From Klebsormidium nitens (taxonomy: Eukaryota; Plantae; Klebsormidiophyceae): a DNA stretch of 37,258 nt. The notes beneath the pieces are model-generated. The model was not told where the DNA came from. It saw only the letters and a program-made list of their open reading frames with translations, and did no database searches. Positions 1,528 to 25,733 of the stretch are shown here, in pieces (the first letter of the stretch is position 1; every line of letters begins with the position of its first letter). The stretch covers positions 1 to 37,258 of the forward strand of contig DF237005.1 of NCBI GenBank assembly GCA_000708835.1, given 5' to 3'. The position numbers were made by a program, and so were the translations under genes.

Positions 1528-2175
1528 TCAAGAAACGTTGCTGATTGGCGCGGACCCCACCTGCGCACCTTCATCTCGGCTCCGTTCCAATACTTCCGGA
1601 GGCTTCCGCAGCGGTTCTGGGTGATCCGACTCCGGCGCACTGGCTGGTTGATCTTTAGACGGACCGACCGGTGACAAGTGGTCGGGATCTGCCCCCGCCG
1701 GTGAGACGGCGCCTGGAGGCATAAACCGGGACACGTCACCGGGGCTCTCGCTAGCTGGTGCCTCCCTAGGGGGTATGACCCGGGACACGTCTTTGTCGGG
1801 ATCTGCCTCGGCTGGTGGATCTGTGGGGGACCGGAACCGGGACACGAGAGTGGGGTGTGTTTTAGCTGGTCCGTCTGCCGGGGAATGGAAGCGGAGAACG
1901 GAACCGAAATCGGAATGTTCTTTGGCTAATTGGTCCCCCTGGGGACGGAACTGGGGAACGGAACGGGAACCGGAATGTTCTTTGGCTGGTTCGTCCCCCG
2001 GGGGACGGAACCGGCCCGCCCAGCCCGTCGTGAGGCCCTGCATTTGGTCGCCGTTCGCCCCGGCCTGGGCTGCCCGGTTGACGAGGCACTTCCGGAAGGA
2101 GAAGTCTTCCGAGGAGCCGTCGGTCCTGAGGACGTGGAAGCACCGGTCGCTTTGGCCCTTCGGGGCGCGGTCGAC
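1528..2175 (-). CDS. NRPD1/NRPE1: Pol IV/V subunit last exon (E22): C-terminal half of DeCL/DUF3223 plus Pro-rich repeat tail
   Basis: Acceptor ttccag|GTCGAC; VDRAPKGQSDRCFHVLRTDGSSEDFSFRKCL matches the DeCL consensus (RCF.V...DG...DFS.RKC); stop TGA at 1528-1530. Confidence 0.88.
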   Translation of the reverse strand, partial: VDRAPKGQSDRCFHVLRTDGSSEDFSFRKCLVNRAAQAGANGDQMQGLTTGWAGRFRPPGDEPAKEHSGSRSVPQFRPQGDQLAKEHSDFGSVLRFHSPADGPAKTHPTLVSRFRSPTDPPAEADPDKDVSRVIPPREAPASESPGDVSRFMPPGAVSPAGADPDHLSPVGPSKDQPASAPESDHPEPLRKPPEVLERSRDEGAQVGSAPISNVS

Positions 2176-8100: not shown

Positions 8101-11100
8101 CATCACAGGGACGTTTAACTGCTAACCAGGCTGATTGCAGGACTTGAGTCTTCGATTTTTCAGCACATAGCCGTTCTAAACCTCGTTGCAAGGCTGGATT
8201 TGACCACCAAAGTCTGGTTGTTAGACATGTATCCACTTTCTAACCATCCAATAACCAGTCGAAAGCTATCCATGGTCAAGGGCCACATACTCCAGTGAAT
8301 CACTGGAAACAAGAACACTCGGCTGTGGCGATGTCTCTCACAAGCAAGAGGCTGGAATTGCCATTCTCGGTTCAAATACCCGTCAAAACGGACTCAAGTA
8401 AGCATTGCAAGGTACTATCAGAACAAGAAGGACGAGCTCTGCGCCAAGCCGCAAAACCTGTCCGTCGATTCCTGCCCAAAGGGTGATGATCAGTTGGTCT
8501 TTCTGATATTCGTGGCGGAGCGCTGTTTGCTTTTTGTCTTCAAGTTTCGTAGATTCTCACCGTTTTGGAGGACTGGAGATGGAGTCTTCCACGGGTTGGG
8601 GTACTTGCGGAAAGTCGACAGAGAACTCCTCTGGAAGCATTTCTTCGGCTCTTTCCGCCAAAGTCTGGAGCTCATATGCGGCCGGCGCGTTGCCGTCGTC
8701 TTTCTGCCGCCGTTTGGCCGCCAGAGTTGACCGCAGGCATTCAGCGACGTGGCCCTGGGAAAGTACCGTGATGTTATGTGATAGAGCACCTTCGATGGCG
8801 AAAGAATTTTGTGAAACCTTTCCGGCAAACTTAAGGTTACCTGCTAAACAGCACCGAAACGACCGTTTTCGCTTGAAGTAGTCGCTGACAAGTTCGGCAG
8901 GGCAATGTATCAACTAGCAGTACGGTGGTATCGACCGTACGGTTGAAAAAGGTCAGCGCCCGGGGGACGGGTGGGGATACTTTAGGGATTTGAGCAAGTC
9001 CCTCAGGAATACTGCAAGCATCCTAGACTTTCTTCATCTCTTCTTCTTTTGGATTTGTCGGATGTCACGCAAGCCTTTCTACTGGAAGTAAATTCACCTG
9101 TGCTCAGATCGAGCGAGCTCCCGACCTTGCGAGGTCTAGGCGGCAATTTCCGTAATGTTTAAATGACCGTAACCCGGTTCTGAAGCCCCCCGCGCCCCGA
9201 TCGCAAAAAATGTCAGAATTGCTCTCTACGGGGCCAGTGGGTCAAGACAGGTCAAGATGGTGTACCTCAGAGAAAGAATTGAAGATCCAAGATGAGTATA
9301 ATCCCCAAGTGACAGAACATCGCGAACCCAAATACTTACCTGCTCCGCAACCCTACCCACCCCTAAAGCCCCAAACGAACCCTTACCGTTCGCTTACCTC
9401 ATTACGTCAACTTGACATCGAGTTTCTTGATTTTGGGTCAAGTGTAGGATAAGCCGAGACAAGAAAGGATTCGATGCGAACTAAGTTAGCAAGAAGGAAG
9501 AGGGGCTGCGCGGTCTTACCGAGTCGCGCAGCTCAAGGATTGCCAGGGCCGGAGCCGCGTTCATATCCAAGACCAGATTTGGGAGCCTAACGCCACGTGT
9601 CGATCCGTCGACCTCTAGCCACGTGTACGACGTCAGTGTCAAGGTGGGACGATCCTCCTTGAGCATGCGCCTGGGTGGAGTAGGCAAAGCATGAGGAGAA
9701 GAGTTTTGAAAACAGCCCAAAAGGTCGGAACTGGCAGACATCGCAGTTTTTCTCCACGCGTTTCAAAGAGAGCGAAGGAAACCGGTGTCAATTGCGTGAA
9801 GAAATCCCTACGGAGATGCGCAAAGTGTAATCTGCGTGCTGAATAGATGATTCAATACCTATCTCTGATGACAGAAGTATTAGTCCACTTAAGCAAACAA
9901 ACCACGATCTATTCCTAATCTTTCAACGCATCCCAGCCTGCTGGAATCAATCAAACCCAGCCCGCTGAATCGATCAAACGTACGGTCTACTCAGACGGCT
10001 CCAGTTGTCGATCGAGGGTACGACTGAGAGACGTTGATTGCTCCTCACACGACGCGCCACGAGGCGACCGCGGCCTCCAAAGAGCGCGGCCGCAGATGCC
10101 GCTCGAAGTGTGCGCACACGCGCGCGCGGAGGGGCGTGAGGAGGGCGCCACGCGCGTCGGGCGGCTGGAGCGCTAGGTTGACGGCTGTGGTCTTCCCTTT
10201 CAGAGGGTCTCGCTTCAAGGTAAGAATATCCTGCAAACAGAATCGGCAAGAAATTTCTCAAAAGTCCGGACACCGGCAAAATATCTTCCATCAAGGTACC
10301 TTTTTGACCAGGACACACCAAAAGTGTAATTTGAGTCATCTTGACTACTCAGCGAGTTCGCAATTCGCAACGTGCACACTCATGAGTCCGATGAGGCCAT
10401 TAAGCTCAAGTAAGGGAAAGTGAAAAGGTAATGATCGGATCAATCTCATCAATCAGTTTGAAGTTTAGAGACACTGCCTTTAAGAGTCGGCCAGATTGAT
10501 ACGCAGATTGCGGCTCCCTTCGTACCACCAGCAAATGTAGAGAAAATAACACCCTGTGCATGCGTGCAGTATTTGGTCGAAACCTGAACCATTCCAAGAC
10601 TGTTCTTGTGAGCGAAAGGAAGAAATCCAATCTCGTTTTCTATTCCTGCTCTCCCAAACGATCGAATTACATCCTAGCGATCATTGCAATATGAACCGCC
10701 AGTACATGAAACACGACGAAATGTGTTTTTACTCGCCTTAACTCGTCGCGCCACGTCTAGTACCCCGCCACCCGGCCGCTTCACCGCGTCCAAAACCCCC
10801 TGCGCCAGCGGCTCCGCGAGCGCGTGCGCGGCCGCGGCTCCGACGGCATCGCCCGCTTCCGGAAAGCCCCACGTCCCTGGAATTCCGTCGTCCCAGGTTC
10901 CTTCCGCCGGAACGTCCGGAATACCGCCAAACGTCGGGTTCTCGTCATCGCACGGGTCCGACTGCATAGGCTCCGTCTCGCATTCCGCTTCCGGTCCAAG
11001 CGGTGACGTCTCTTCCGCTGTAGGGTCACCGAAACTCTTCTCCGTGGGTTCCCCGTCCCCTTTCCCGCCGGAATCCGCGCGCGCCTTTGCGAACTCCCCC

Positions 11101-14100
11101 TCCGTCGTCTGCGCGCCGTCAAAAGGCTGGGTCACTTCGTTGAAGGCCCCCCCGGCATTGCTGACCTCGTCCATTGCCTTCAGTACGTCATCCACTGCAT
11201 CAAGGACGTCAGTCAGCTCATCGCTGACTCCATCCCGGGGGGCGCTTCGAAACTCGTCGCCCTCCGCTCTCTCGGTTCCGCCGCCCCTCATGTTGGACAA
11301 CGCGGAGCCGGAAACCTCTTCGCCGCTCGCTTCGCTCTCTCCATCACTTCCGCTGTTCGGCATCCATTCAGGATCCTCTTCTGAGCTCGAGTTGTCAGAG
11401 GTTTTCCTAAAATTCTTTCGCTTGCGAACCTTGGAAGCGTCCTTTTGCGGCGGACTCGAGTTATCGCCAGAGCCCACACCGCCAGCGACGGAACGCTTTC
11501 GCCTGCGGGTGACTTTCAGGCGGCGCGGCCGCGGCCGCGTTCCGAACGCCCGCACCGGACCTTCCTGCCCTTCGCCTCCTGTTTCCATCTTGGTCACATC
11601 CGACGGGTTTACAGCGTCCACGTCATTCTGCACCATGTTCGTGACGCAAGCGAGCGCTGCCCCAATTGATTGCGATCCGTCGCTCAACTTTTCCGTTTCG
11701 ATCCCCAGGGCGCCGTCAGAGCGGGCGGAAACAGACCCCGGAACGGCCCCCTGTTCGGTCTTTCCACTAGACACTTCTGGCAAATCCTGCTTTCGCTCGT
11801 CTTCGGCGGAGGCAGAGGGAGCTCCACTTCGCAGCGTCTCCGAACCCTGAGCTGCTTCAACCCTCTCCGGGTTAGAAGACTTCTCCTTTTCGCCCCTATC
11901 GCTACTCGCTTTCAAACCAGTCCATCCAGAAGTGGTATTCTTCCATCCGTCTTCGTTCCCATCCCAACCTCTGTCACCTTCTTGGCTCCCCCTCTCACCA
12001 CCGCTCCGGTGCTTATCAGTCTCCTCCCCTCCCTTTTGCGTCTCCATCCCGTCTTCGTCTTCCCCCCACCTCTCGCCAGGAGCATTCTCTTCCTGACCCT
12101 TTCCTTCTTCTGACCCTGAATCCTCGTCGTACCACCATTCCGTTCCAGGGGTAGGAAACTTCTTCCGCTCCAGGCCCAGAAACGGAACCTTCGAGGGCGA
12201 ATCCAGCAGCACTCCCACCCCGCGCGCTCCACGCGCGCGCGCACGTTCCGTCCGCTTGATCGGCTCCGGCTCGGTGCGCGCGCCCACTCTTTTGGAGTAC
12301 TTCGCCCGGGCTCCGTCCCATTCTGTAGAGGGAAACCGAACCACGTGGCCGTCTGCCGACGTCACCATGCCTAGTTCGTCGAAGGTCAAATCGCCCAGAT
12401 GGAACATAAGGTTCTTGCCCTGGAAGGAGAAAAGAGCGATGTCAGATTAGAGCAGAGCCTTAATTACTTTTTCCCCATCTTCCGGGTGCTTGCATGGGGT
12501 TGGCAGAACGAGGAGTCCTGACACTGGAGAAAAGTGGGGAGAATATGGCTCATCAATGATCAAAGAAGGGGCTTTCTCATTGATGAGCCAGATTTTTTTT
12601 CCACCTTGAAGAGAGGAGCGTATTCGAAGCTGACGTGCCCTTCTATTCTAAGCCTGCAACCGTCCCTCTTCAGAACCAGCAACCCTTGGTAGCTTTTGCA
12701 GAGGCAATGCCAGCTTTTCTAAAGATGCAACTTTCTAAAAAGTTTCCGAGCCAATTTTTTTTTTTAACTTTTTGCTTGGCTTGCTTCTCTCCTATGCTGC
12801 ACCCGATGTTCCCTGACGCGACAGGAGCAGAAGATGAATCATCAAGAATGACGCTACAAACTTCCGACGTTTTATTAAGTGGACTGATGAATCTTCTATA
12901 TCAGATCAATTTCGAAATAGAAACACAAATGCAACCAGCTAAGCGAAGCATACCAAGAGAGGATTTAGAGTTCCTCACAATACTGTACGGTAGGTCATTC
13001 CCGGTCCCCTTCAGCACGAGCGAGTGCCGCTCCGCCATCGCCTGGGCGAAGAAGTGGTCCGCGCGCGTGCGCGCGCCGGACACCAGCGGCGTCCGGATGA
13101 ACTTGTGGGCCTCAAAGTACGCGGCCGCGAAGCGCGCCTCTTCCCGATACTGGCGCGCGAAGGCGCCCGGCAGTGCGCGCGCGCTGACCAGCCGCGAGCG
13201 GCCGCGGCTCAGTTCGTCGAAGCGAGAAGCCCACCTGAGGGAAAAGAGAATGTTTTGAATCGCCGAGGTGTTTGCGAAAGGAAAGAAAAGTGTCGGCCTG
13301 TCTTCTTTCTTACACTAAAATGGAGCGTCTCTAAGAAATCAGAAAATCCAACGGGTAATATAGAAGCGCCCCCGGACAATCGACTTTGGAAAACGTGAAG
13401 CTTTCTTGACGCGAAAATCGATCGGAGCTTTTCTGCTTCTTCTATGGCGTGAATCAACAAGAAGAATGAATACAAGATCCTGCCAAGTATCAGATTCCAA
13501 ATGAACTTGGTCAAAATCTGTGCCCAAGAGCTCCGGGCTCCACCGAACCGGAACCCAATCCAGATTGCAAGTTCGACATACCCGTGTCGAATTCTCATTT
13601 CGGCCAGAGCCACCGCTCGGCCACCGCTCGGCGCTAGCAAAAATGCGAATAGAAGATTTTAGGCATTGCTCAGATTGAGTCTAAACCTGATGAAGCGATG
13701 CTTTGAACCATCCCTCTCGTAAATATTCCTCGCCCAATCCTTGTTGGCCTTAATGGTAGCTTTTCAAAGTTTCTGATTTCAAAACGACGCGGATCCTTCA
13801 AGACACCTCACCAGCTTTCGGACGGCAGGTGCGGCAGGAAGCGCTCGGTTTCGAGCATCGGCAGCAGCGCGCGCCCCTCCCACAGCTGGAGGCCCTGTGC
13901 GAGCGCCATCTTCTGCAGATTGGCGGGGGATCCCTTCGACCCTGCTTCGTACAGGGCCCGGAAGGCGTTCCCCGGGGGCACGTGTCGGTTCATAAGCGCC
14001 TGCTCCTCCTTTGCGGCGCGCTGCAGGTATCGACTTGTTACGGAGAATTTTGTTTATCTTCTATATTTGTGCCAAATCCGAAGGGCTCGATTGCATCTCG

Positions 14101-17100
14101 TCAGTACCTCGACCTAATCCAACAGAATTCTCAGGTGCAGCAGTGTTTTCGAGACAGGCATCGCGACAGTGTTGAATGAGAGATGCTGTTGAGATTCAGC
14201 TTGTGTTTGATGAACGATCCGCGAGGCTGAATTGACGTCTTGTAGCAGAAGTTAGGGGGCAAAATACTCCAACATGTATGTATGTGTAAAAATTGCGACC
14301 AATACTTGTTGGAATTTTCACTAACTTATCAATTCTAGGATGCGGAACTTACAAGGAGTTCAGAAGAGAAGCATGTACACAACTGTTGTGTCAGGACTGC
14401 CAGAGATTGCCACTTTTCATCCTTGTCCTGAGGACCAGCGTTCTATCTTCAGAAAGAAACTTCGTCCTTGAATGATGAACATTTCTGACAGAGCGACCAC
14501 ACAATGTTTCTCCTCACCTCGAATACGCGGATCACATCGCTCTGCGCTTCTTCGTCCCTCCGAAGACGGCCCCACCAGTTGGCCCTCCTCTTCACAGGCG
14601 GCCCGTGACATTCTTCTTCCCTGCCGACTTCCTCGCTTGCCGTCCGCTCCGGCGCCTTCCGCTTCCGCCCGCTCCCTTCCGGCGGAACCCCAACCCGGCT
14701 CTCCTCGGCCGACAGCGCACCAGTTGAATTCCATTCCTTTCTTAACCCGTTCTTAACCCACCTCCCTTGACCAATCAGCTTTTTCACCTGTCTCAGATCT
14801 TCCAGCGCGAAGCGCATCCCCGCCCTCTTTCTTCCGGTCACCGCGGCCGCGGCCGCCTTCTCGTCGAGCGCGCGCGCGGGTTGGCGCTTCGGCGCCCGGT
14901 TTTCTCCCCCGGGGATCCGTTCTCCATCCAGTTCCGTTAGCCCCGAACCTTCCTTCGAGGACCCCGTTCCGCCCCAGCCGGTTCCGGTTCCGTCCCATCC
15001 TGTTCCGCCCCAACCGGGCGGGTCCGACCGACCGGTCTGTCTTACTGGCTGGTTATCCTGGTTATCTGCGTCCCCACTCAACCCCCCTAGTGACACACCC
15101 TCTCCCAGGCTGACGTCAGCATCGCCTCCTCTCACGGCATTCAGTACCACTGTGACGTCACCAACGCCGTCTTTGACTTCATCCTGCTCCATCACGGCGT
15201 CAAAATCGGGATCGCTCCACGCCTCTCTCTGCAGCGGATCGTCCTCGGGGGATCCTCCTCCCCGGAGGCGCGCGGGCGCGTCGCTCACGCTCGCGGCCCC
15301 GCTCGCGTCAGGCGGCGCGGCCCCGTCCGAGCTTTCGCTGTCAAGCACCGTCCGCTTCCGCTTCCGCCGCGGAACGGACTCCCTCCTCGCGCCCGGCTTG
15401 CGCGCTTCCCTCGCCTCTAGTTCCTGACGCAAGCGTTCGCCAAGATCGCCCGTGTCCGCATGCATGACCGATTCCGGTTCCGGTTCCGCCGCGCTCATCT
15501 TCACGACGCAGCGGATCGCTATGCGCAACGCCCGCATGCGAATCTGCTCAAATTTGTTTTGTGCCCGGTTGGAAGAACCGGGGGCGCGGCTCGGCGTGAT
15601 CAGCAGGTCCTCGAGGCCTAGGCTGAAGCCCCGGTTGTCCAGGAAGACTCGGGTAAAATGCGTAGCCGCGTCAAGGAAGCGCACCGCGGCCGCGGCGCCG
15701 TACCTGGGGCAAAAGATTGCAATCATCCGGTCATCAAAATGGGTGTCGGAATCAAGGCTCGGGAAATGCACATTCATTGAGTCTGAGTGTTGTTTGTACG
15801 GACCAGAGTCGAAAGTTTGGTTAATTGAAGTTTCCAGCACCGTAGACTGCCTGGATTGGACACGCGTGTCGTACATCCAGTGATAAGCATGAGATGACAA
15901 GATGCTCAGAGGGTTGACGGCAGAAAGTTTCAGAAGGAAAGCGGAAGCTACGATTGCTTGTCAAAGGGCAAGACAGGAAGGAACGTATCCAGTCAGGCAA
16001 AGCGGTGAAAGTCGTAAACTTCTGACTCGAAGCATAGTACTCGCGGCGGTCTGTTTCTATCTGATTCGTTCTGCTGAAGAACTTTTTCTTTGCTCCCGGA
16101 TCCAAAATGCCCTGAAAGTGCTTTAATTTTGAATTGCCTCGAGCTGCGTGGACAAAAAGAGTAAGCACGCTTTAACTTCAGAAGCCTTATATAAACAGTA
16201 CGAACTAAACTCCCATGAACACATTACGAAACGCCGGTAGGAGAAAGCTTCCTAATACCTACTCTCTAGAGTGGGTTTCCCATCTTGATTGAATCTAACA
16301 GGCTCTGTGCTCAAAAGCGCAATCCCAAGCCCAGGCAAACCAACTTCAGAAACACCTTTTTGGTAGATACTTTCTGTGCAATCTTCAAAAAGGGTTCTTG
16401 TCAGGGCGACCATCAAGTCGCTCACATTCTCCACAGGGTCGCCACGAGGCCGTCCGGCGCCTCCCCTAGCCACGTGGCGCCCATCCGTGCGCCGTAGAAT
16501 TCCGCCCGTCCCCTCGCGATCCGGACGCCGTCTTCTTCGCTAGCGTACGTAAAGCCGTCCGGAAGCGCGGCGCATAGGATCTGGTCCGCGGTGTAAACAG
16601 GCTCCCCGTCGAGCTTTCGTCTAGCGGGGGGATCCGGAAGCAGCGTTTGCTCCCCCCCATCCGCTTCAGTTCCGGTTGGGGGGTCAAATTGCAGCCGTTT
16701 TTTCGACCCCCCACTGCGAGAAGCTTCGTCCGGTATGCCCACAACAAGCTGGCAGGCGTCCGCACGGGTGAAGTCAACCGGGGCCCCCTTTCTGCCTGAC
16801 GTCAGCATGAGGAACACGCCCAACCTGGAGTCCTGCCACAGGGCAACGAGCGCCTGGCCCTTTTGCGTAGACGTGACGTTGGCTGACGTCAGCAGGAGCT
16901 CCTGCGCCTCGGCGCACGCTTCCGGCCCTTGCGGCACGTGAAGGTTCATCTGCGAGTGAGCGTCGAACAACGCTGTTAGATGCTTTCTTTGGAGCAAATG
17001 AAAGCAAAAGAAGTGGGTGAGCATTGGGATGACTTGCAGTGAACTCGCTCGACCACGTTCACACGAGAGCACCGGTTTTAAACTCCGCTTCCGATAGACC

Positions 17101-20100
17101 CTGACCCCCGGTTCTCGCTCCGTGCACCCGCTTTGAATGAGCGACTCTGTTCAAACCCCTCCACGGTACCTTACTACGGAGCTTGTTATGTATGCTCGTT
17201 TTAACCGCGCATTTGCGCAAGCTGCCGGTTTGGAGACATGAGGAGACAGAAAGCCAAATGACTAAGTTAGTCAAGTCTCAACACACATAGCGACAACTAA
17301 CTTGGACTTCGGATGGAGAAAGACTCTCACCTCCTCTATCAATCTAGAACCAGCAGCTTGCTCGGAAGGCTCAGCTAATGCACTTTTTATTTTGTTTTGA
17401 TGCGGGTCACTTGTAATTCATCTATGTTTCTGGCGCCCCAGTCAGCTTTGAAGACCACCGTCGTTTCATGTGCTGAGTCTGACCTATGAAACTACGAGAA
17501 GATTCAGGACGCTCACAGGTTGGAGATGCCCTCAGAGTCTGACTTTCTCAGACCGAAACTTTCTCACACTTTCTCACAGGCCTTTTTGGAGGCGAAGTCA
17601 GTGGCGCTCACCTCATCTCCGTCAAAGTCGCCGTTGCACGCGTGGCAGAGCGGCAGCGGCAACCCAATGGTTTTGCAGTCGGTTAGCTTGACCCGGCTTG
17701 CTAACAGATTGTGCTGCCGGACCGACGGGTTGCGGTTCCACAAGACCAGGTCCCCTTCCGTCAGCAACCTTTCAATGACGTCACCCACTCGCAGCTCGAA
17801 CTGCCCCGGGCTGACGAGGGCGACTTTCCGCCACGTTCCGTTCCGCCGGAACTGGACGATCTGCCCGTCGAACGGACGGACCGGCCTGTTGGGCGCCCGT
17901 GCTTTCTCCCGCTTCTCTTCTTCTTGCACTCTTTCTTCTCCACGTGATCCTTTCTTGGCGACACCTTCCCCTTGCATTCCTCTCTGCGAGTCGCCCCAAA
18001 CCCCAGGCGCCTCGAACTTTGCCCTCGTCTTTCCCCATCCATCTTCACCGCTTCTCTCATTCCTTTCAGCAACCAACTTCTCTTCTTCCACACCCCAACC
18101 GGTTGCCTCTTCTCCTTCACCGGGCGCTTCTTCCTGCCAATTGCTTACGTCATCCGGGTTACTGACGTCATCTCGAGCCACTGCCGCGCCCCAAGCGCCC
18201 GGTTCACCCCAACCGGTCGCCCCTCCCTTATCTTCACCCATACTCTTTCCCGCACTTCCTTGGTTGGTCTCATTTTGTGCGCAGTCAATGTCTTTTTGCT
18301 CCTCTATGTGTTCTTCAATCGGTTCACGGGCTCCTGGACGCTCCGCTTCAGTTGGATTCGCTCCACCTTCCGGGTCGTTGAAGTCCGTTTCCTGCCAGCC
18401 CGTTCCGCTCCGTTCCGTTTTCCAGGCCGTTCCTTCCGCTGCAGCTTCCGAATAACCCCTTCTTCCCCTCCCACTTTCAACCTCCATCCTGTCCACTGGT
18501 TTTTGGGGACTTTCCGTTGTGTCTCCGTCAGCAGAATCAGCCTCCTTCATGCAGTCAACATTACCCCATCCAGACCCTCCGCCCCACACTGGCTGGCTTT
18601 CGAGATCGGCGTTCCGTTTAGTTTCCGTTCCGCTCTTCCGCTGCTCGTCCATCCCTGCCTCGACAGAACGCTGCTTCCCCGCATCGCCCACGCCGCCCCA
18701 CCCTGTTCCGCCGCCCCATCCCAGCTGGCTTCCGGTGTCCTGATTCCGTTCCGTTCCCTGTCCTCCGTTCCGCTGCTCCTCTATGACTACGTCACCTGAA
18801 CGCTGCTTCTCCGCACCGCCCACATCACCCCAACGAGTTCCCCCGTCCCCTTCCGGCTGGGTTCCGGTGTCATCATTCCGTTGGTTTCCCGTTCCGTTCC
18901 GCTGCTTTTCTAGTCTTACTTCATCGGAACTCTGCTTCTCCGCACCGCCCACTTCGCCACAACCATTCCCTCCGCCCCACCCTTCCACCTCCGGCTGTGT
19001 TCCATCAATCTCTTTCCGCTGCATCTCCGTCCTTCCGTTCCGCTGGCCTGCCGCTTTCTCCTCCCCAGCTCCCCAGCCCCTATCGCTCTGCCGACGAGTC
19101 CTTTGGTTCTGATCGCCTTCCGATTCTCTACCGGTCTCAAATGCCTCTCCCGCCCTAGTTGCAGTCCCATCATTTGACGGGCCCTCGGTTGCATCTTCCG
19201 GGCACTCTTTCAACGGCTCGTCTCTCTCCAGGAGTCCTCGGGCGGCTCGAATTGATCGCTCGAAAATTCCCTGCAGCCTCGGCAGGTTCAACGACGTCAC
19301 CCTCTCCGTTTTTCTGAGGCCCATCTCCCGGGGGACTTCGACCGCGGTCACGCTGACGTCAGCGGCGGGCGAGATAACGCTGCGGCCGCTGTAGTCGCTC
19401 CGTTTGCCCTTGAGGAGCGCCACGTGGCCCTCTTTCGGCTCTTTGGGCGGCTGGATCAGGTCGAGGATGCCCCGGTCTTTCTTGGTGGGCGCTCGGGCCT
19501 GCATTAGAATCCGAGCTTCAGTTTCTTTCTGCTCCGAGGAGGACTGGTGTACTGATTCTGAAGGTGTTTCAGAGAACCCGGTTTGGAAGGCGCAGGTATG
19601 TATCTCTGAAGCTTTGACCCCTTGACCACGATTGGTCTAAGGGAATCAGAAATAAATCACGTTTCGTTTGTAGAAAAAGTTCTTAATGCACGTCTCTTCG
19701 GGTGTCCGCCAATGCAAGTAGCGACTGCCCGGCGTCTGACGGAACCTGCCGGACCGTCGGTCACACGGTCGGGAAAGACAGATGATGAACAAGAGCCAGA
19801 AGGTGGATCGCCGAGTATCAGAAAAAGTTTTGACGAGCGGACTTGGCTCGCAAAAGAAAAGTACAATCGGAATCCACTGAGGGGCTTGTGAATGTGAGCG
19901 GATCTGTCACGAGCACCATGTTCCCTTCTCTAGTGGTTCTTCCACAAGGGCTTAGCTTGCTTCGAACAACATCCTGAACAAACGATCCATCATGTTTGCC
20001 GCTATTCCGGCGCGCTGCTCTGTCTGAAGGTGCGTGCCAACTCTTCGTTAAATTCCATCAGCTGCGGACACAAGTACAGCTCTGTTCAAACCCCGACAAG

Positions 20101-23100
20101 TCGAAAACTGCAGAGTAACTCGGCACGTTCCCAAACTCCCACGAAATCAAGCCAGTGTCGAAAGACGTGTTCCCCGCACCTTCCGCTGTTCCGCTGTTCC
20201 GCTCTCCGGCTCCTTGGCGGCCGCGCGGAAGAAGGAGTTGACGGGCGGCTGCAGGCGCTCGAGCTCGAACACGTCAGGCACTTTGCCGGCGTCCTTCAGT
20301 TGTTTCAGCTTCTTGTTGGCCGCCAAGATTGACCGCAGACATCGGGTGATGTGGTCCTGAATCACGACAGGTCGTAGTCTCAGATTTTCCATCGTGTAAC
20401 GCTTAAGTATCCACAGGGCTGCTTCTAGGGCTCTCGAGAGGTTGAATGACCGAGATTATAGAGTGATCAATCTTCCTTTTGCGAGAGAAAACATTCAGGA
20501 GTGGGATTGAATGAATGACCGTGAACCTTCTGCTTTTCTGAAACGAGGAAATGTGCGACTCTGGACGTATGCTCGACATCCCCAGATTGATTCCATTTTT
20601 GTGCTCTAGTAGTACTGGCGGGAGCCACATTGGATGCTTCTTCCGTTATGACTTGAGCTTTTGCACAAATCTAGGGATGATAAGGGACTTGAAGTTCCGA
20701 AGCAGAATACTGTAATTCATTGCGTAGAAGACTTCCAGATTCTTCAGGGTCTGACAGTTTTGCTTCTCCTTGAATTCTTGACTGGAAGCAGAACACTATG
20801 AAGACCCTCTTTTAAAGGCTTGTACGAGTTGAACCACTTGATCAATCTGCTCTCACGTTTGTCAAGAATTTCAGGAACCGCAGCTTACCACTTTCAAGCG
20901 GGAGGCCCACTCCGGAGCGATCCGGAGGTGCGGGGGCGGAACGAGGAGAACGGAATGAACTAGCCACTCCGGTCGGCCAAGACCTCCCCGCGGCTTGAAA
21001 CCCCTCCACTCCTCGTCAGTGATCTTTTTGAAAAGCCTCTGGACCTGCAACGGTAATAAAAGATCACGTGGGCTTTTGTATTCACGCATCAAAATCGGTG
21101 CTGTTCTGGTTGACATCAGCGTTCTACGGGAAGATAGACTCCTCATGGGCTGTTTTGAGCCTGTTCATAGGCCGTCACAGATCGCGAACCCGACTCATGT
21201 ATAGCGTTGAGAAATTGACTCAGAATTTTGACTAGAATGATGGTTTTTGGCGCCTCAGAGTGTCCCCGTCTCCAACGCAGGGATACGCATAGAAGACCAG
21301 GCTGCCCAAACAGCACATTCTTTGGTCCGAACTTGCGCTTCGTCGAAGGTCTGTCAGATGCCTTTCAATGGAGCAATATAGCATGAATATGATGCAGGGC
21401 CTCCAAGAAAGTCTCTTTGAAGAAAGCCTCTGAGCCTCGTGGCTTTGCCGCGACCCATCGTTTGACAGGTTGCAACTGCATGTCGCCAGATTCTGTATAC
21501 ACGTTGCTTCCGAGCGACTGCACAGGTGGAGTTACAAGCAACTGGTCGCCGCGGCACACTTTCAAACGCGCCTAGGACGTAGGGGACTGGTTCAGATTCG
21601 GCGACCGAGAGCAGGCCGTGGTCCGCTTTCTTGGACGCCATCTCCGTCCTACGTGGCCAGATTCGCGGCGACTGCGACTGCGTTACCGCCGTCTCACGGT
21701 CGCCGGCACGGGGCTTACCGCTTTTGCGTCGAAGTCTTCTCGGAACTCGACGTCGGCTCTCTTCTTGCACACCGCGCAGAGCATCCGCCGGAACTGCAGA
21801 ACCTTCGCCTCAGCGGACTCTTTCACGGAATCCTCGCAGCAAACCTCGCCCCCATCGCTCTCATCTCCTTCGCTTGATTCCGCCGGAACGCGTTCCGCGG
21901 CTCTCCGGCCGGCTTTCGGACGGAGCTGCAGCCGGTGGCCGTTGAAGTTGAGCAGCGGGGGCGGCTGCATCGCATGAAAAGGAATAGATCATAACTCTTT
22001 GTTTTCGTTAACACTGCACACTTATTGTTGATCGATTATCTTTCTCACACATGTTAGATTGCTTGAATGCTCAAGAAGATTGGTCATGCATTTTAGCAAT
22101 AGCGTTCAATCGACGAAGCGAGGGGCTAAGATTGCCAAACCATATCTAGATCTCAAAGCTCTCACGGCTAGCATTGGAAGACTTTTGCAGGATGGGCTCC
22201 TTTTAGAAATGCACCCGAGCTTTTTATCAAGCACAGAAACTAAAATTATTTACCTCAGTAGTTCCTAATGATTCTGATACTCGCCTATTCATGTCAAAAG
22301 TGGCTTCCTAAGAAGCGATTCCCTTTCCTTCTAGTCGACGTTCTGAAAAGGGGCCTTTAAAAACAAACCTTCTGAAGACATACTCTAATGGTTGCGCTGC
22401 AACCATTAGAATTCTCTACTTGCTCCAGAAGAAAGACTCCCTTGTCGAAGAGCCCCACTTTAGACCAGCACGTTTGAGTTGTGGCCCAATTAAAGGTTGG
22501 CAGTCAATGGGGAACCGCAGAACGCACTCCTTCACTAACTCTCTGCCCAGAACGCGTAGCTACTCAGTACTTGAAAGTGACTTCAAGATCAGAAGGTATA
22601 CAACTGTTGCTTAGGTATGCCTTAAAGCCGTCTCGATTTTGCGTCAGCCATTGTACGAGATTCGACTCTCACCACCTTTCTGCTGAGGCGTCGTCGGCAA
22701 TTGACGCAGAAAGAGAGCAGCACTTGGGTGACTTTTGGGATGAGATGTGGGAAGAACACTGGGAAGACGAGCTCGATATGGCCCCAGTGTCCTGCGAAAA
22801 GTAACAAACGGGCGACTTCAGCTGAAGGTCACGGAAGCATGCCGCACGTCGCTCGACCCTGTTAGACACAGGGTCGCAGCGACGTCAGCAAACAGCACGT
22901 GGGCTCCAGGGTGTTCGGCCCGGTTGACAGCAGTTTTTCGTCTCGATTGAGGCACGTGACTACATGAGTGGAGGCGCTCCGCCTTTGGCCTTCAACAAGG
23001 CATGAGCGGAAGATACTCTGCTAGAATTCGAAAACCCTGCTTCAGATGCAACGTGATTGTGATTGTGATACGAAGCTTGTGCTTTTGTGCAGCTTTTCTT

Positions 23101-24109
23101 GGGGTTTTCATAGAGTACACGGATACGAGCTCAAGTAGACTGGATTTGCACTCCATATAAATCTTGTATCGGTTAGGAAACCGTGGGCGTTGAAATGGAT
23201 TCAAACAATCTCCTTCAAACGAGATATCGGCCGAACGTGAGGGACCAAGAAAAGGACGGTAGGCATTTTACCCGGGCAGTTGCTCTCAGCCGTTGACGGG
23301 TCAGCTTTGCCGTCGCACGTGCCGCAGGTACCCTTCTGCTTTAAAGACACCCCAAGACGGGGGTCGCTCAAGTCAGCAGCGTCTCGGATCTCGAGTATCG
23401 ATAGTTGCTGCAAAACACCAACATGCGATGGGGGTTTTTTGGCGAAGGAAAGAAAATGAGGCAAGGTCTGAGGCTCAAGCTCGAAAAAAGCGGGCAGTCT
23501 TTTCTGCTCGAACGAGTCTGTGAACCAAGGGAAACTGAAGCCTGGCTAGAAACGGCGCATCTGTGGAGGCGTTTAACCGGGTTCTTGAGAAGGCCCCTCG
23601 AGAGCTCTATACTGATGCCACGCCCAAAATGGAAAAGCGTTGAGTGATCTGGCCCACCTCGAAGCTAGTATCCTCTCATGAATTTGATTGAAAACACGTC
23701 CAAAACCTGATGTCAGAATCTTCCGCAGAATATCTCCCTGACCTAAGAAGATTGGATTCTAAACCATCTTTACCAGTGTTCCGGTCCAGAATGATCATAA
23801 ATCTCAGGTGCCCACTTTATCCTTTTCACTGTTCATTCCGAAACACAACCCAGAACTTGAATTGAGCAGTAAAGTTCAGAACTTGACGAACCCTATGAGT
23901 TGAGGCTCTTCCTGCTGAGTGGTCTACGCGACAAAGACTTTCTCCGATCAACCGCTTGTCGGTGAAGCGAAGGAGTACTCAAAATGAGGGGAAGCGAAGC
24001 AAAGTTTGAGACCCCTAGTTTTTGAGCCTTAAAGCGAAGTGCTCACTCGAAGCTCCTGGTCTCCCATCAGCCCGAACTCAATGCTCTGTACGGTGCCCAC
24101 TTCGGCCAT
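1528..24109 (-). CDS. NRPD1/NRPE1: RNA polymerase IV/V-type largest subunit (RPB1-derived), spliced gene, at least 3,510 aa
   Basis: Exons join in frame across canonical splice sites: 24047-24109, 23272-23407, 22673-22791, 21719-21964, [unresolved 21045-21718], 20889-21044, 20180-20356, 17612-19498, 16426-16949, 14518-15703, 13812-14020, 12979-13234, 10737-12419, 10049-10230, 9520-9670, 8561-8754, 7878-8026, 6785-7350, 6082-6255, 5179-5505, 3416-4800, 2594-2708, 1528-2175. RPB1-family motifs appear in order: LSDPRLG..CGTC..CPGHWGHIEL, FCVNC, RPEWL..VPPP, GKRSDYSGRSVISP, NRNPS, NGDFDGDEMNLHVPQ, AGSKGS, AGDAVG..AEP, LGIEAA, HLELVADKMT, GTG. These are followed by a GW/WG CTD and DeCL, with no YSPTSPS heptads. 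Confidence 0.92.
1672..2013 (-). repeat. Six degenerate 18-20 aa coding repeats (RF.PP.D.PA...(D)VS) after DeCL
   Basis: Units: RFRPPGDEPAKEHSGSRSVP / QFRPQGDQLAKEHSDFGSVL / RFHSPADGPAKTHPTLVS / RFRSPTDPPAEADPDKDVS / RVIPPREAPASESPGDVS / RFMPPGAVSPAGADPDHLS. Confidence 0.8.
2594..2708 (-). CDS. NRPD1/NRPE1: Pol IV/V subunit exon E21: DeCL domain core
   Basis: cctccag|G TAC...ATC AAG|gtggga; (R)YEISERLSPEDQQFVLEELLAYHEKAAEKIGCGVEAIK, typical DeCL (D..FVLE.LL.YH....K.G.GV..I.V). Confidence 0.9.
3416..4800 (-). CDS. NRPD1/NRPE1: Pol IV/V subunit exon E20: GW/WG-rich CTD (AGO-hook) and start of DeCL
   Basis: Open frame from acceptor tccag|CAG to CG|gtaag; 15 GW/WG motifs by manual count; ends DPLVTDLRAKRNWASTILRR and splices in frame to E21. 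Confidence 0.88.
4207..4689 (-). repeat. Three ~47 aa CTD repeats, each with three GW motifs
   Basis: DPGSGWDEPVEGTGWDIPREPKKAGNKSGTGWNGSEAPLQRGPAKES / DPGSGWGDPVEGTGWNLNTEPAQTVNNAGTGWKSVETPLERGPANES / GWGNPVGATGWGISIEPHQVKSPANRSGTGWNTPESCLERRPGSETG. Confidence 0.85.
5179..5505 (-). CDS. NRPD1/NRPE1: Pol IV/V subunit exon E19 (region H, end of catalytic core)
   Basis: ttgcag|AAT...CAT|gtaaga; APKILTDAAYAGQRDALTQPSARAGLGLPVASGTGGGFALL aligns to RPB1 region H (..L..AA.....D.......I..G....GTG.F.L). Confidence 0.88.
6082..6255 (-). CDS. NRPD1/NRPE1: Pol IV/V subunit exon E18
   Basis: ttcag|GAT...GAG|gtgagg; DLQEVYGDKVDRKHLELVADKMTASGKVLSLNMNGYK matches V..RHL.L..D.MT..G....N..G. Confidence 0.9.
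6785..7350 (-). CDS. NRPD1/NRPE1: Pol IV/V subunit exon E17
   Basis: ttgccag|GG TCT...GAG|gtgagg; GSSWVASAT..LTVTVE..LQTEG..MDPFRS..DVAESLGIEAA; contains a ~60 aa Gly/acidic insert (about 6920-7099). Confidence 0.85.
7878..8026 (-). CDS. NRPD1/NRPE1: Pol IV/V subunit exon E16
   Basis: ttgtag|G...GGA G|gttggc; RRNQALVDDPRRLVVRALLGWWTRKDAPFDKRMERFESKVREVLETNIG; phases fit both neighbours. Confidence 0.75.
8561..8754 (-). CDS. NRPD1/NRPE1: Pol IV/V subunit exon E15
   Basis: ttcccag|GGC CAC...AAA CG|gtgaga; GHVAECLRSTLAAKRR...; phase 0 in, phase 2 out as required. Confidence 0.75.
9520..9670 (-). CDS. NRPD1/NRPE1: Pol IV/V subunit exon E14
   Basis: cacccag|G CGC...TCG|gtaaga; RMLKEDRPTLTLTSYTWLEVDGSTRGVRLPNLVLDMNAAPALAILELRDS; supported by phase continuity, weak homology. 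Confidence 0.7.
10049..10230 (-). CDS. NRPD1/NRPE1: Pol IV/V subunit exon E13
   Basis: ttgcag|GAT...GT|gtgagg; DILTLKRDPLKGKTTAVNLAL...HLRPRSLEAAVASWRV. Confidence 0.8.
10737..12419 (-). CDS. NRPD1/NRPE1: Pol IV/V subunit exon E12: bridge-helix C-terminus, ~490 aa foot-position insert, degenerate trigger loop
   Basis: cttccag|GGC AAG AAC CTT ATG; KNLMFHLGDLTFDELGMVTSADGHVVRF...AGDAVGAAAAHALAEPLAQGVLDA...VK; donor is AAG|gcgagt (GC-AG). Confidence 0.85.
12546..12590. repeat. Perfect 14-bp intronic inverted repeat (hairpin)
   Basis: TGGCTCATCAATGA (12546-12559) and TCATTGATGAGCCA (12577-12590); AAAG/CTTT can extend the stem. Confidence 0.85.
12979..13234 (-). CDS. NRPD1/NRPE1: Pol IV/V subunit exon E11 (region F, bridge helix N-terminus)
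   Basis: ccctcag|G TGG...ATT|gtgagg; ...HKFIRTPLVSGARTRADHFFAQAMAERHSLVLKGTGNDLPYSI. Confidence 0.82.
13812..14020 (-). CDS. NRPD1/NRPE1: Pol IV/V subunit exon E10 (funnel, GSKGS)
   Basis: cctgcag|CGC...TG|gtgagg; NAFRALYEAGSKGSPANLQKMALAQGLQLWEG...RFLPHL matches RPB1 NN...M..aGSKGS..N..Q....GQQ..EG...R.LPHF. Confidence 0.9.
14518..15703 (-). CDS. NRPD1/NRPE1: Pol IV/V subunit exon E9 (region E plus ~310 aa funnel insert)
   Basis: gccccag|G TAC...GAG|gtgagg; YGAAAAVRFLDAATHFTRVFLDNRGFSLGLEDL, then a low-complexity insert, then EEAQSDVIRVFE. Confidence 0.87.
16426..16949 (-). CDS. NRPD1/NRPE1: Pol IV/V subunit exon E8 (pore)
   Basis: ctcgcag|ATG AAC CTT CAC...AT|gtgagc; MNLHVPQGPEACAEAQELL...QDSRLG...TADQILCAALP...GLVATLWR. 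Confidence 0.9.
17612..19498 (-). CDS. NRPD1/NRPE1: Pol IV/V subunit exon E7: region C, dock domain with ~450 aa GW/WG insert, Metal A site
   Basis: aatgcag|GCC...GAG|gtgagc; GKRSDYSGRSVISP..VEVP..ERVTSLNLPRL [insert] LRVGDVIERLLTEGDLVLWNRNPS...NGDFDGDE. Confidence 0.93.
18554..19045 (-). repeat. Four 43-47 aa tandem coding repeats (last one partial) with WG motifs inside the dock insert
   Basis: QRNGRTEMQRKEIDGTQPEVEGWGGGNGCGEVGGAEKQSSDEVRLEK / QRNGTGNQRNDDTGTQPEGDGGTRWGDVGGAEKQRSGDVVIEE / QRNGGQGTERNQDTGSQLGWGGGTGWGGVGDAGKQRSVEAGMDE / QRKSGTETKRNADLESQPVWGGGSGWGNVD. Confidence 0.88.
20180..20356 (-). CDS. NRPD1/NRPE1: Pol IV/V subunit exon E6 (clamp coiled coil)
   Basis: gattcag|GAC...AAG|gtgcgg; DHITRCLRSILAANKKLKQ matches RPB1 DDLT..L..I...N..L. 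Confidence 0.88.
20889..21044 (-). CDS. NRPD1/NRPE1: Pol IV/V subunit exon E5 (region B); 5' boundary uncertain
   Basis: VQRLFKKITDEEW...RPEWLVHSVLLVPPPHLR; donor GTG|gtaagc. The exon may extend upstream to about 21105 (RDLLLPLQ). Confidence 0.8.
21719..21964 (-). CDS. NRPD1/NRPE1: Pol IV/V subunit exon E4 (clamp head, CAVC zinc ligands)
   Basis: atgcag|CCG...GCG|gtaagc; ...LCAVCKKRADVEFRED; the donor choice is uncertain. Confidence 0.7.
22673..22791 (-). CDS. NRPD1/NRPE1: Pol IV/V subunit exon E3
   Basis: ttcgcag|GA CAC TGG; GHWGHIELVFPVFFPHLIPKVTQVLLSFCVNC matches GHFGHIEL..PVFH......L...C..C. Confidence 0.9.
23272..23407 (-). CDS. NRPD1/NRPE1: Pol IV/V subunit exon E2 (region A zinc site)
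   Basis: ttgcag|CAA...CCG G|gtaaaa; LSDPRLGV..CGTCDG...CPG. Confidence 0.9.
24047..24109 (-). CDS. NRPD1/NRPE1: Pol IV/V subunit first coding exon E1
   Basis: ATG at 24109; MAEVGTVQSIEFGLMGDQELR|gtgagc matches the RPB1-family N-terminus (V..I.FG.....E.R). It is too short to appear in the ORF track. Confidence 0.85.
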
Positions 24110-25345: not shown

Positions 25346-25733
25346 TATCGCAACCGTTGCCTAATGGCTCGTAATCACCAAGGGAGCAACAAGTTGGTTG
25401 CGTCTTTCTTGGTACCGTACTGCCACGAAACCTTGCTCTTCTGCGTCACCACCCCGCACGTGCTCCCGCGCCCCACACCTGTCCTGCATTTGGGTTTGCA
25501 CAGTCTGCTCTCTACACGAATAGACTACATTCTCTTCACTCTAGCTCTGAGCTCTCTTACTCAGCTCATATAACTTCGGCGCCAAAGCTTGCATTCCTTC
25601 GATCAGCATCTCTTGTTCAAAGCAAATCTAACAAGCGCCCTTCTCATCTACTAGCAGCTTCGAGCAGCTCTCTATGCTCCCCTCTCAGCTTGCCCCAAAC
25701 TGCAGCTGAGGGTATTCACACCACTGCGCTCCC

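What the first reader, a model, noticed from the sequence alone, without database searches (positions are those of the whole stretch)
17885..19228. AGO-hook-like repeat array inserted in the dock domain beside the RNA exit channel
About 450 aa is inserted between ERVTSLNLPRL (RPB1 ETVTPYNIDRL) and LRVGDVIERLL (LQYGWKVERHI), which is the dock domain. It holds 13 GW/WG motifs and four tandem 43-47 aa repeats, showing recent expansion. The insert is in one uninterrupted 1,887-nt exon with the active site. In Pol II the dock binds TFIIB next to the RNA exit. Inference: AGO-siRNA complexes could be tethered exactly where the nascent scaffold RNA emerges, while TFIIB-type initiation is excluded.
Basis: partly seen in the sequence, partly recalled or inferred. 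Interest (0 to 1): 0.88.

Follow-up and report, generated by a model that had tools for sequence, protein, structure and literature searches.

The report
Argonaute-hook insert in algal Pol V-like polymerase
A plant-type silencing RNA polymerase (Pol V-like) gene, probably from a streptophyte alga, carries a roughly 450-residue disordered, tryptophan-glycine-rich loop inside its catalytic core next to the RNA exit; it looks like a built-in landing pad for Argonaute proteins, a variant not described for this enzyme family.

Summary
On the minus strand, one 1,887-nt exon (19498-17612) encodes the Rpb1 active-site region. It is interrupted by a 447-aa Gly/Glu/Trp-rich segment (19216-17876) with 15 Trp, 13 of them next to Gly (0 of 20,000 shuffles reach this). 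It lies between the positions matching yeast Rpb1 residues 391 and 421. A land-plant NRPE1 has 21 residues there.

The gene is an NRPE1-like (ancestral Pol IV/V) largest subunit: weak Rpb1 domains 1-5, then a C-terminal GW platform, then a DeCL/DUF3223 domain, with no heptads.

Four intact orthologous exons from environmental assemblies keep an open, GW-rich insert at the same site (259-408 aa, 3.2-3.6% Trp). Against the nearest one, dN/dS is 0.48 and Trp positions are conserved. Across the deeper split only Trp density and context persist.

The repeat array has three full copies plus two partial ones. Copy number differs between species, but the expansion is not recent.

The Argonaute-hook reading is well supported by sequence, but binding is untested. 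GW clusters also sit in two other core inserts and in the C-terminal domain, so the idea that position at the RNA exit matters is only inference. The claim that the insert excludes TFIIB has no evidence. This is a new variant of a known kind.

The parts
17612..19498 (-). Exon of 1,887 nt (629 codons) holding the active-site region with the insert
   Evidence: Acceptor AG at 19500-19499 and donor GTGAG from 17611, phase 0 at both ends. It lies inside a 690-codon stop-free frame, 17567-19636. Pfam RNA_pol_Rpb1_2 scores 78 bits in two stretches.
19217..19498 (-). N-terminal conserved flank (active-site domain up to the helix before the dock)
   Evidence: Aligns to yeast Rpb1 330-391, human RPB1 343-408 and archaeal Rpo1N 307-366. 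Collinear with land-plant NRPE1 ORF residues 82-134.
17876..19216 (-). GW/WG-rich disordered insert (447 aa)
   Evidence: 15 Trp, 13 next to Gly. Composition: Gly 18%, Asp+Glu 21%, ILVFMYC 10%. Mean hydropathy 0.341 against a fold boundary of 0.442. No Pfam family. Open and GW-rich at the same site in four intact orthologous exons.
18530..19078 (-). Tandem repeat array inside the insert (32 + 46 + 41 + 45 + 19 aa)
   Evidence: TRF reports period 132, 2.5 copies, 75% matches. Protein alignment of the copies; DNA identities 0.72-0.81. The nearest orthologue has one full copy fewer.
17612..17875 (-). C-terminal conserved flank: dock strands and metal A site (DFDGD at 17629-17615)
   Evidence: Aligns to yeast Rpb1 421-488, Arabidopsis NRPE1 380-455 and NRPD1 383-452. 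Aligns to land-plant NRPE1 ORF residues 156-221, E 9e-10.
14452..15960 (-). Exon-like ORF with the end of Rpb1 domain 3 and a second GW-bearing insert (cluster at 14976-15012)
   Evidence: Pfam Rpb1_3 profile positions 120-162. GW contexts. Conserved in L001, L002 and L003.
10677..12446 (-). Exon-like ORF with a third GW-bearing insert (cluster at 11924-12068) between Rpb1 domains 4 and 5
   Evidence: Only the ends are conserved in L002 and L003.
3415..4863 (-). C-terminal GW/WG platform ORF (483 aa; 22 Trp, 15 next to Gly)
   Evidence: The residue context of its Trp correlates at r = 0.93 with that of the dock insert.
2083..2710 (-). DeCL / DUF3223 domain, split over two exon-like ORFs (2573-2710 and 2083-2187)
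   Evidence: PF11523 at 45.2 and 42.8 bits against a cut-off of 21. Aligns to the DeCL of Arabidopsis NRPD1, residues 1395-1421.
1878..2011 (-). 20-aa tandem repeats in the tail after DeCL
   Evidence: TRF period 60, 2.2 copies; translation.
1531..23545 (-). Approximate span of the whole NRPE1-like gene
   Evidence: Rpb1 domains 1-5 lie in exon-like ORFs at 22625-22828, 20874-21164, 20150-20455, 17567-19636, 16425-17150, 14452-15960, 13811-14053 and 6034-6453. The exon order is collinear in L001-L003. The 5' and 3' ends are not determined.

Best explanation
The window holds the gene for an NRPE1-like largest subunit of a specialised silencing RNA polymerase, the single ancestral Pol IV/V type described in charophyte algae. 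Inside its active-site exon, a lineage-specific, intrinsically disordered segment of about 450 aa has been inserted into the surface loop that leads into the dock. It has grown partly by tandem duplication of a unit of about 44 aa.

The segment is translated. Selection keeps a high density of Trp flanked by Gly or small residues while the rest of the sequence turns over. That is the signature of an Argonaute-hook (GW/WG) platform.

The most likely function is that each exposed Trp can occupy a Trp-binding pocket of an AGO PIWI domain. The polymerase would then hold several AGO-siRNA complexes on itself, in addition to those held by its C-terminal platform.

Because its two ends are anchored beside the RNA exit path, this platform would do in cis what the GW tail of KTF1/SPT5L is proposed to do in trans in Arabidopsis. 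There the tail is anchored by the KOW5 domain near the RNA exit.

- **Shown:** gene identity, coding status, location, composition, conservation.
- **Inferred:** AGO binding, and any advantage of the position.
For: **Gene identity**
- Rpb1 domains 1-5 are present.
- A DeCL/DUF3223 domain lies downstream on the same strand, preceded by a 483-aa GW ORF.
- There are no heptad repeats.
- The domain-5 exon hits only Arabidopsis NRPD1 in the PDB.
- The same order, GW platform then DeCL, is seen in a bona fide land-plant NRPE1 locus, L004.
- Charophyte homologues with this architecture are published (PMC11194755).

**Location**
- The flanks map to yeast Rpb1 391 and 421.
- The land-plant NRPE1 comparator has 21 residues where the window has 484.
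- Among 147 other largest-subunit homologues, the spacing is at most 113 residues longer than with no insert, and none of the larger gaps carries a GW motif.

**Coding status**
- The frame is open for 690 codons, while the other frames are closed about every 60-130 codons.
- Against L001, dS is 0.59 in both core and insert, and dN/dS is 0.48 in the insert against 0.26 in the core.
- The frame is open in four intact orthologous exons.

**Hook signature**
- 13 of 15 Trp are next to Gly, P = 3e-5.
- Trp is 3-4 times the composition expectation in all four loci tested.
- Trp density is 3.2-3.6% whether the insert is 259 or 447 aa long.
- Ten Trp positions are kept with the nearest orthologue, against a shuffled mean of 4.7; 0 of 200 shuffles reach ten.
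- The Trp context matches the gene's own C-terminal platform (r = 0.93) and partly that of a land-plant NRPE1 platform (r = 0.55).
- [TS]GW occurs 25 times on the gene's strand, almost all within the insert and C-terminal frames, against 11 over all three frames of the other strand.

**Precedent**
- A GW tail is anchored at the Pol V RNA exit in Arabidopsis (PMC10229537).
Against: - No binding, expression or peptide evidence is available here.
- Between the two orthologue groups the insert is no more alignable than shuffled sequence. Trp-Trp matches are 4-6 against 3.3-3.8 for shuffles, so positional conservation holds only among close relatives.
- dN/dS of 0.48 and large length changes show weak constraint.
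- One related locus (L003) has this exon in two reading frames.
- The AlphaFold model was uninformative, with mean pLDDT 34 and the core also low. Disorder therefore rests on composition only.
- The hooks are spread over four regions, so nothing singles out the dock site functionally.
- That the C-terminal GW ORF and DeCL belong to the same transcript as the catalytic exons is inferred from order, strand and published homologues, not shown.
Confidence: 0.55

Rival explanations
1. The insert is a tolerated expansion segment. A surface loop acquired low-complexity sequence by replication slippage, and it is translated but has no specific partner. The GW motifs would reflect the repeat unit that happened to be amplified, plus the Gly-rich composition.
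For: Tandem repeats and copy-number change between species. Length varies from 259 to 447 aa. dN/dS is 0.48. The two orthologue groups cannot be aligned. One locus has a broken frame.
Against: - Trp enrichment of 3-4 fold and Gly adjacency recur in both groups, although their sequences are otherwise unalignable.
- Most GW motifs lie outside the tandem array.
- The same motif context is used in the gene's classical C-terminal platform.
- dN/dS is still below 1.
Confidence: 0.2
2. The insert is a functional disordered region, but its Trp-rich motifs serve something other than AGO. It could bind another protein with Trp pockets, contact nucleic acid, or drive clustering of polymerases.
For: The composition is compatible with multivalent interaction in general. 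No AGO evidence exists here.
Against: In this enzyme family the only documented role of reiterated GW/WG is AGO binding (PMC2910046, PMC11194755, PMC10229537). The context matches the gene's own C-terminal platform.
Confidence: 0.15
3. All or much of the segment is an unrecognised intron or is otherwise absent from the mature protein.
For: There are no transcript data. Published gene predictions for these algal genes are described as partial (PMC11194755). L003 is out of frame within the insert.
Against: - The frame is open over 447 codons in four intact orthologous exons at dS 0.59 and beyond.
- dN/dS is below 1, with an excess of third-position changes.
- The alternative frames are closed.
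- A close relative of L003 (P0152) is open.
Confidence: 0.05
4. The gene is a decaying paralogue and the insert is junk in a pseudogene.
For: Weak Pfam scores for most domains. Gly stands where orthologues P0002 and P0151 and the best PDB matches have Ala, just before DFDGD.
Against: All conserved exons are open and collinear in relatives. Core dN/dS is 0.26. DFDGD is intact. Fast evolution is typical of NRPD1/NRPE1 (PMC11194755).
Confidence: 0.05

Closest known systems
NRPE1 (largest subunit of plant RNA polymerase V) and its C-terminal AGO-hook platform
   Same: Rpb1-derived catalytic region, a GW/WG platform followed by a DeCL domain, and no heptads. The platform is repetitive, disordered and evolutionarily labile, and only the Trp motifs and the composition are kept.
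   Different: In Arabidopsis-type NRPE1 the hooks are confined to the C-terminal domain. The land-plant comparator L004 has 3 Trp, none next to Gly, in 632 aa of core, and 21 residues at the site where the window has 484. Here a platform of nearly the same hook count (13 against 15) sits inside the active-site exon.
Single ancestral NRPD1/NRPE1 homologue of charophyte green algae (Chakraborty et al. 2024, PMC11194755)
   Same: A DFDGD metal A site kept within a diverged surrounding, AGO hooks plus DeCL at the C-terminus, and fast-evolving catalytic motifs. This is probably the same gene family, and possibly the same or a related organism.
   Different: That paper looked for hooks only downstream of the last catalytic domain and stripped gapped columns from its alignments. 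It reports no GW insert within the catalytic region. The organism of the window is not identified.
KTF1/SPT5L GW tail anchored by its KOW5 domain near the Pol V RNA exit channel (PMC10229537)
   Same: A multivalent GW/WG chain held next to the RNA exit of a Pol V-type enzyme, proposed to recruit AGO4/6 to the nascent transcript.
   Different: KTF1 is a separate elongation factor acting in trans. Here the chain is part of the polymerase subunit itself. There is no homology between the two.
GW182/TNRC6 Argonaute-binding domain
   Same: Reiterated GW in a disordered region with few hydrophobic residues, and multivalent AGO binding through Trp pockets.
   Different: Cytoplasmic miRNA effector, with no polymerase context and unrelated sequence.
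Lineage-specific inserts in polymerase largest subunits that create partner surfaces: the Pol IV funnel-helix-tip insertion (RDR2 contact) and the Pol I expander and 'dock II' inserts
   Same: An insertion in the catalytic subunit that supplies a built-in interaction site (PMC10229537; PMC9438803).
   Different: Those inserts are short or folded and lie at other sites (funnel, jaw, foot). This one is long and disordered and lies at the dock.

Membership tests
NRPD1/NRPE1-type (Pol IV/V) largest subunit | Rpb1-homologous catalytic domains with the metal A site DFDGD | tested here: met
   Pfam Rpb1 domains 1-5 across collinear exon-like ORFs. DFDGD at 17629-17615.
NRPD1/NRPE1-type (Pol IV/V) largest subunit | C-terminal DeCL (DUF3223) domain in place of a heptad-repeat C-terminal domain | tested here: met
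   PF11523 at 45.2 and 42.8 bits in two downstream ORFs on the same strand. Aligns to the NRPD1 DeCL. No heptad-like motif in any minus-strand frame. Continuity in one transcript is inferred, not shown.
NRPD1/NRPE1-type (Pol IV/V) largest subunit | Placement in the NRPD1/NRPE1 clade rather than the Pol I, II or III clades | tested here: inconclusive
   The domain-5 exon hits only Arabidopsis NRPD1 in the PDB, at E 0.0012. [quoted passage not shown] No tree was built, because a joined model was not made.
NRPD1/NRPE1-type (Pol IV/V) largest subunit | Foot-domain deletion and diverged bridge helix and trigger loop | not tested
   Only weak, partial Rpb1_5 matches were seen. The exons between 6.4 and 13.3 kb were not resolved.
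NRPE1 subtype (Pol V) | AGO-hook platform between the catalytic region and DeCL | tested here: met
   ORF 3415-4863 has 22 Trp, 15 next to Gly, and lies upstream of DeCL. The order is the same as in land-plant NRPE1 locus L004.
Argonaute-hook (GW/WG) platform | Reiterated GW/WG/GWG motifs beyond chance | tested here: met
   13 of 15 Trp next to Gly, P = 3e-5, 0 of 20,000 shuffles. Trp is 3-4 times the composition expectation.
Argonaute-hook (GW/WG) platform | Motifs embedded in an intrinsically disordered region poor in hydrophobic residues | tested here: met
   Hydropathy 0.341 against a boundary of 0.442; ILVFMYC 10%. No secondary structure is predicted over exon residues 87-545, but the model is low-confidence throughout.
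Argonaute-hook (GW/WG) platform | Only Trp motifs and overall composition conserved among orthologues | tested here: met
   Trp density is 3.2-3.6% in five sequences. Positions are conserved only with the nearest orthologue (10 against 4.7). Deeper comparisons are no better than shuffled.
Argonaute-hook (GW/WG) platform | Binding of AGO through Trp-binding pockets of the PIWI domain | not testable with these tools
   No AGO sequence from this organism and no binding data.
Rpb1 dock domain (site of the insert) | Insert lies within or at the edge of the dock, next to the RNA exit path and the TFIIB-ribbon site | tested here: met
   The flanks align to yeast Rpb1 391 and 421. The 36 conserved residues just before position 421 follow the insert, so it sits at the N-terminal edge. 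That Rpb1 residues of about 390-450 form the dock is from my memory of Cramer et al. 2001. The role of the dock is cited from PMC7111264. No three-dimensional model was obtained.

The most novel reading that the evidence does not exclude
In this algal lineage the single ancestral Pol V-like enzyme carries its main Argonaute tether inside the catalytic subunit, at the dock beside the RNA exit. AGO-siRNA would then be pre-positioned on the emerging transcript in cis. This would do the job that land plants later gave to the trans-acting GW tails of SPT5L/KTF1. It might also compensate for the loss of the SPT6L hook reported for Klebsormidium (PMC10991848). The step-wise growth of the insert across relatives (about 67, then 260-280, then about 410-450 aa) would record that specialisation.
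Probability: 0.2. Interest if true: 0.8.

Novelty: new variant of a known kind. Interest (0 to 1): 0.55.

Why it matters
Where Argonaute sits on Pol V relative to the nascent RNA is still only a model, based on flexible C-terminal tails that structures do not resolve. A natural enzyme with hooks anchored at two fixed points beside the RNA exit gives a geometrically constrained case to examine. It also shows that hook platforms can colonise surface loops of the catalytic core, not just tails. That bears on how RNA-directed DNA methylation was first assembled in streptophyte algae, and on how such genes should be annotated, since gap-stripped alignments and partial gene models hide these inserts.

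Tried and rejected
- **Structure prediction.** AlphaFold2 on the exon with a 5-sequence alignment gave mean pLDDT 34, with the core low as well. It is not usable for disorder or location, so no fold search was run. A 50-sequence alignment (A3) mis-placed insert residues and was not used.
- **Duplication from the C-terminal platform.** The dock insert is not a copy of it. BLASTP gives E 0.021 over one short stretch.
- **Multiple-alignment Trp counts.** The alignment showed 8 Trp columns conserved in at least 4 of 5 sequences. I do not rely on this across the deep split, because a shuffle control showed that aligners pair Trp by themselves.
- **Organism identity.** Nothing worked: no Rfam hit, no Pfam hit for the neighbouring gene, and the sample ids are not in the literature library. 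'Streptophyte alga' is an inference from the gene architecture and PMC11194755.
- **Pol I reading.** Pol I subunits score lowest on this exon, and 'dock II' of Pol I is a foot insert.
- **Metagenome scan.** The scan with the DeCL exon did not recover the 3' ends of the orthologous contigs. It found only a land-plant NRPE1.
- A joined (spliced) protein model was neither built nor searched. All searches were exon by exon, by reference.
Full report
**What is there**

The feature lies on the minus strand. A frame free of stops for 690 codons (17567-19636) contains the two anchor peptides quoted in the finding, at 19306-19274 and 17794-17762.

Splice signals bound an exon of exactly 1,887 nt, 19498-17612. 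The acceptor AG is at 19500-19499 and the donor is GAG|GTGAG from 17611. Both ends are in phase 0. The donor directly follows DFDGDE. All five related exons read Glu-Val-Ser/Arg at this point, which fits the same GTGAG donor, though I did not read their DNA.

The next exon-like ORF opens with the usual continuation of the metal A motif. I describe this junction only.

**The insert**

Between the conserved flanks lie 447 residues (19216-17876). The composition is 18% Gly, 21% Asp+Glu, 13% Lys+Arg and only 10% ILVFMYC. Mean hydropathy is 0.341, far below the charge-hydropathy boundary of 0.442. The flanks lie above their boundary.

The segment holds 15 Trp, 13 of them next to Gly. Given its own Gly content the binomial P is 3e-5, and none of 20,000 shuffles reaches 13. 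Trp is 3-4 times more frequent than codon-position base composition predicts. No Pfam family matches the insert.

The tandem array (19078-18530) consists of three full copies of 41-46 aa, a 32-aa first copy and a 19-aa last fragment. Copies are 52-60% identical in protein and 72-81% in DNA. Most GW motifs lie outside the array.

**Where it sits**

phmmer against solved structures places the N-flank on yeast Rpb1 330-391 (human 343-408) and the C-flank on yeast Rpb1 421-488. The C-flank also matches Arabidopsis NRPE1 380-455 and NRPD1 383-452.

L004 ORF 360-2255 equals Arabidopsis NRPE1 233-859 at 854 bits, and its Rpb1 domain 2 matches Pfam in one unbroken stretch. It has 21 residues between the aligned flanks where the window has 484.

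The insert therefore enters the loop at the N-terminal edge of the dock. The 36 conserved residues that follow it correspond to the dock proper. Pol II literature places the dock along the RNA exit path and at the TFIIB contact (PMC7111264). The residue range of the dock is from my memory of Cramer et al. 2001.

In 147 other largest-subunit homologues from a search of 1.84 billion proteins, the spacing between the flanks is at most 113 residues longer than with no insert. None of the larger gaps carries a GW motif.

**What gene this is**

Rpb1 domains 1-5 are found, weakly, in collinear exon-like ORFs from about 23.5 kb down to 6.0 kb. Downstream on the same strand come three features:
- a 483-aa ORF with 22 Trp, 15 next to Gly (3415-4863);
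- a DeCL/DUF3223 domain split over two ORFs, at 45.2 and 42.8 bits against a cut-off of 21, which aligns to the DeCL of Arabidopsis NRPD1;
- a tail with 20-aa repeats.

No heptad-like motif exists in any minus-strand frame. The domain-5 exon hits only Arabidopsis NRPD1 in the PDB.

This is the NRPE1 architecture. It matches the single ancestral NRPD1/NRPE1 homologue reported in Klebsormidium, Chara, Closterium and Penium (PMC11194755). That paper searched for hooks only downstream of the catalytic domains and does not mention inserts in the core. The organism of the window could not be identified. 'Streptophyte alga' is an inference.

**Relatives**

Only a handful of proteins in the large collections are close:
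- P0001 (locus L001), 65% identical;
- P0002 (L002), P0151 (L007) and P0152, about 40% identical;
- the fragment P0003 (L003).

All come from unnamed environmental or read-archive assemblies with similar G+C (0.51-0.54), and the neighbouring genes are in the same order.

All carry a GW-rich insert at the same site. The four intact exons have inserts of 408, 259, 279 and 274 aa, with 3.2-3.6% Trp and 67-80% of Trp next to Gly. Trp is significantly enriched in each of the four loci tested.

Against L001, dS is 0.59 in both core and insert. dN/dS is 0.26 in the core and 0.48 in the insert, and the frame stays open in both species. Ten Trp positions are shared, against a mean of 4.7 for shuffled controls; 0 of 200 shuffles reach ten. 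L001 has one full repeat copy fewer, and the more distant group has about one copy.

Across the deeper split the insert is no more alignable than shuffled sequence, and Trp-Trp matches are not significant. What is conserved there is the density and context of Trp, not its positions. That is how Argonaute-binding platforms are described (PMC2910046).

In L003 the exon lies in two reading frames. Its near relative P0152 is open.

**Not the only hook site**

GW clusters with the same [TS]GW-type context also occur in two other insert-bearing ORFs: 14452-15960, between Rpb1 domains 3 and 4, and 10677-12446, between domains 4 and 5. They also occur in the C-terminal platform. [TS]GW occurs 25 times on the gene's strand, almost all in these frames, against 11 in the three frames of the other strand.

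The residue context of Trp in the dock insert correlates at r = 0.93 with that in the gene's C-terminal platform, and at r = 0.55 with a land-plant NRPE1 platform. The dock insert is not a recent copy of the C-terminal platform.

**Mechanism**

The best reading is a translated, disordered, multivalent Argonaute-hook platform built into the polymerase core. It would add to the C-terminal platform.

Its anchoring beside the RNA exit parallels Arabidopsis. [quoted passage not shown]

Three points remain open:
- Binding to AGO is inferred.
- Any benefit of the position is inferred, because a 450-residue flexible chain can reach far and hooks exist elsewhere in the protein.
Arabidopsis Pol V already lacks TFIIB-contact surfaces without such an insert.

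**Rivals**

- A tolerated expansion segment (0.2).
- A disordered region with another partner (0.15).
- An unrecognised intron (0.05).
- A decaying paralogue (0.05).

The main argument against the first is that Trp enrichment and Gly adjacency are kept independently in lineages whose inserts no longer align.

- The AlphaFold model was uninformative, and no fold search was run.
- Continuity of the catalytic exons with the GW ORF and DeCL in one transcript is inferred.

**Verdict**

This is a new variant of a known kind: an Argonaute-hook platform at a new place, inside the catalytic core of an NRPE1-like subunit, shared by a small clade.

Noticed in passing
L006:2916-3701 (+), protein P0140: The read-archive sample that yielded L001 also holds, on another contig, a second Rpb1 domain-2 exon. 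It has a short (about 67 aa) GW-bearing insert at the same dock site, and its metal A region reads AADFDGDT. Its downstream ORFs are poor in GW. This is either a second NRPD/E1-like paralogue in one genome, which would be at odds with the single copy reported for charophytes, or a second organism in the sample.
   Followed up: partly
L003:9030-10714: In this related locus the insert-bearing exon lies in two reading frames. Three of the 12 gap runs against L002 are not multiples of three. A near relative (P0152) has the exon open. This could be assembly error, decay, or a lineage-specific intron.
   Followed up: partly
window 25710-28388 (+ strand): A divergently oriented neighbouring gene with at least four exon-like blocks (about 25710-25976, 26451-26672, 27182-27502, 28065-28388). 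They are 64-85% identical in protein to L001 and L002, so synteny is conserved. No Pfam family matches.
   Followed up: partly
window 14452-15960 and 10677-12446 (- strand): Two further long, low-complexity inserts in the same polymerase gene, each with a small GW cluster. One lies between Rpb1 domains 3 and 4, the other between domains 4 and 5. The equivalent ORFs in L002 and L007 also carry Trp next to Gly.
   Followed up: partly
window 1878-2011 (- strand): The tail after the DeCL domain contains 20-aa tandem repeats (period 60 nt, 2.2 copies, 82% matches), rich in Pro, Ala and Asp. Its function is unknown.
   Followed up: no
L004 and L005 (whole loci): The scan with the DeCL exon recovered a land-plant NRPE1 gene (G+C 0.34) from two different metagenomes, so plant DNA is present in those samples. 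Its core ORF matches Arabidopsis NRPE1 at 854 bits. It was used here as a natural comparator that lacks the dock insert.
   Followed up: yes
window 17630-17632 (- strand): The residue before DFDGD is Gly in the window, P0001 and P0152, but Ala in P0002, P0151 and P0003.
   Followed up: no
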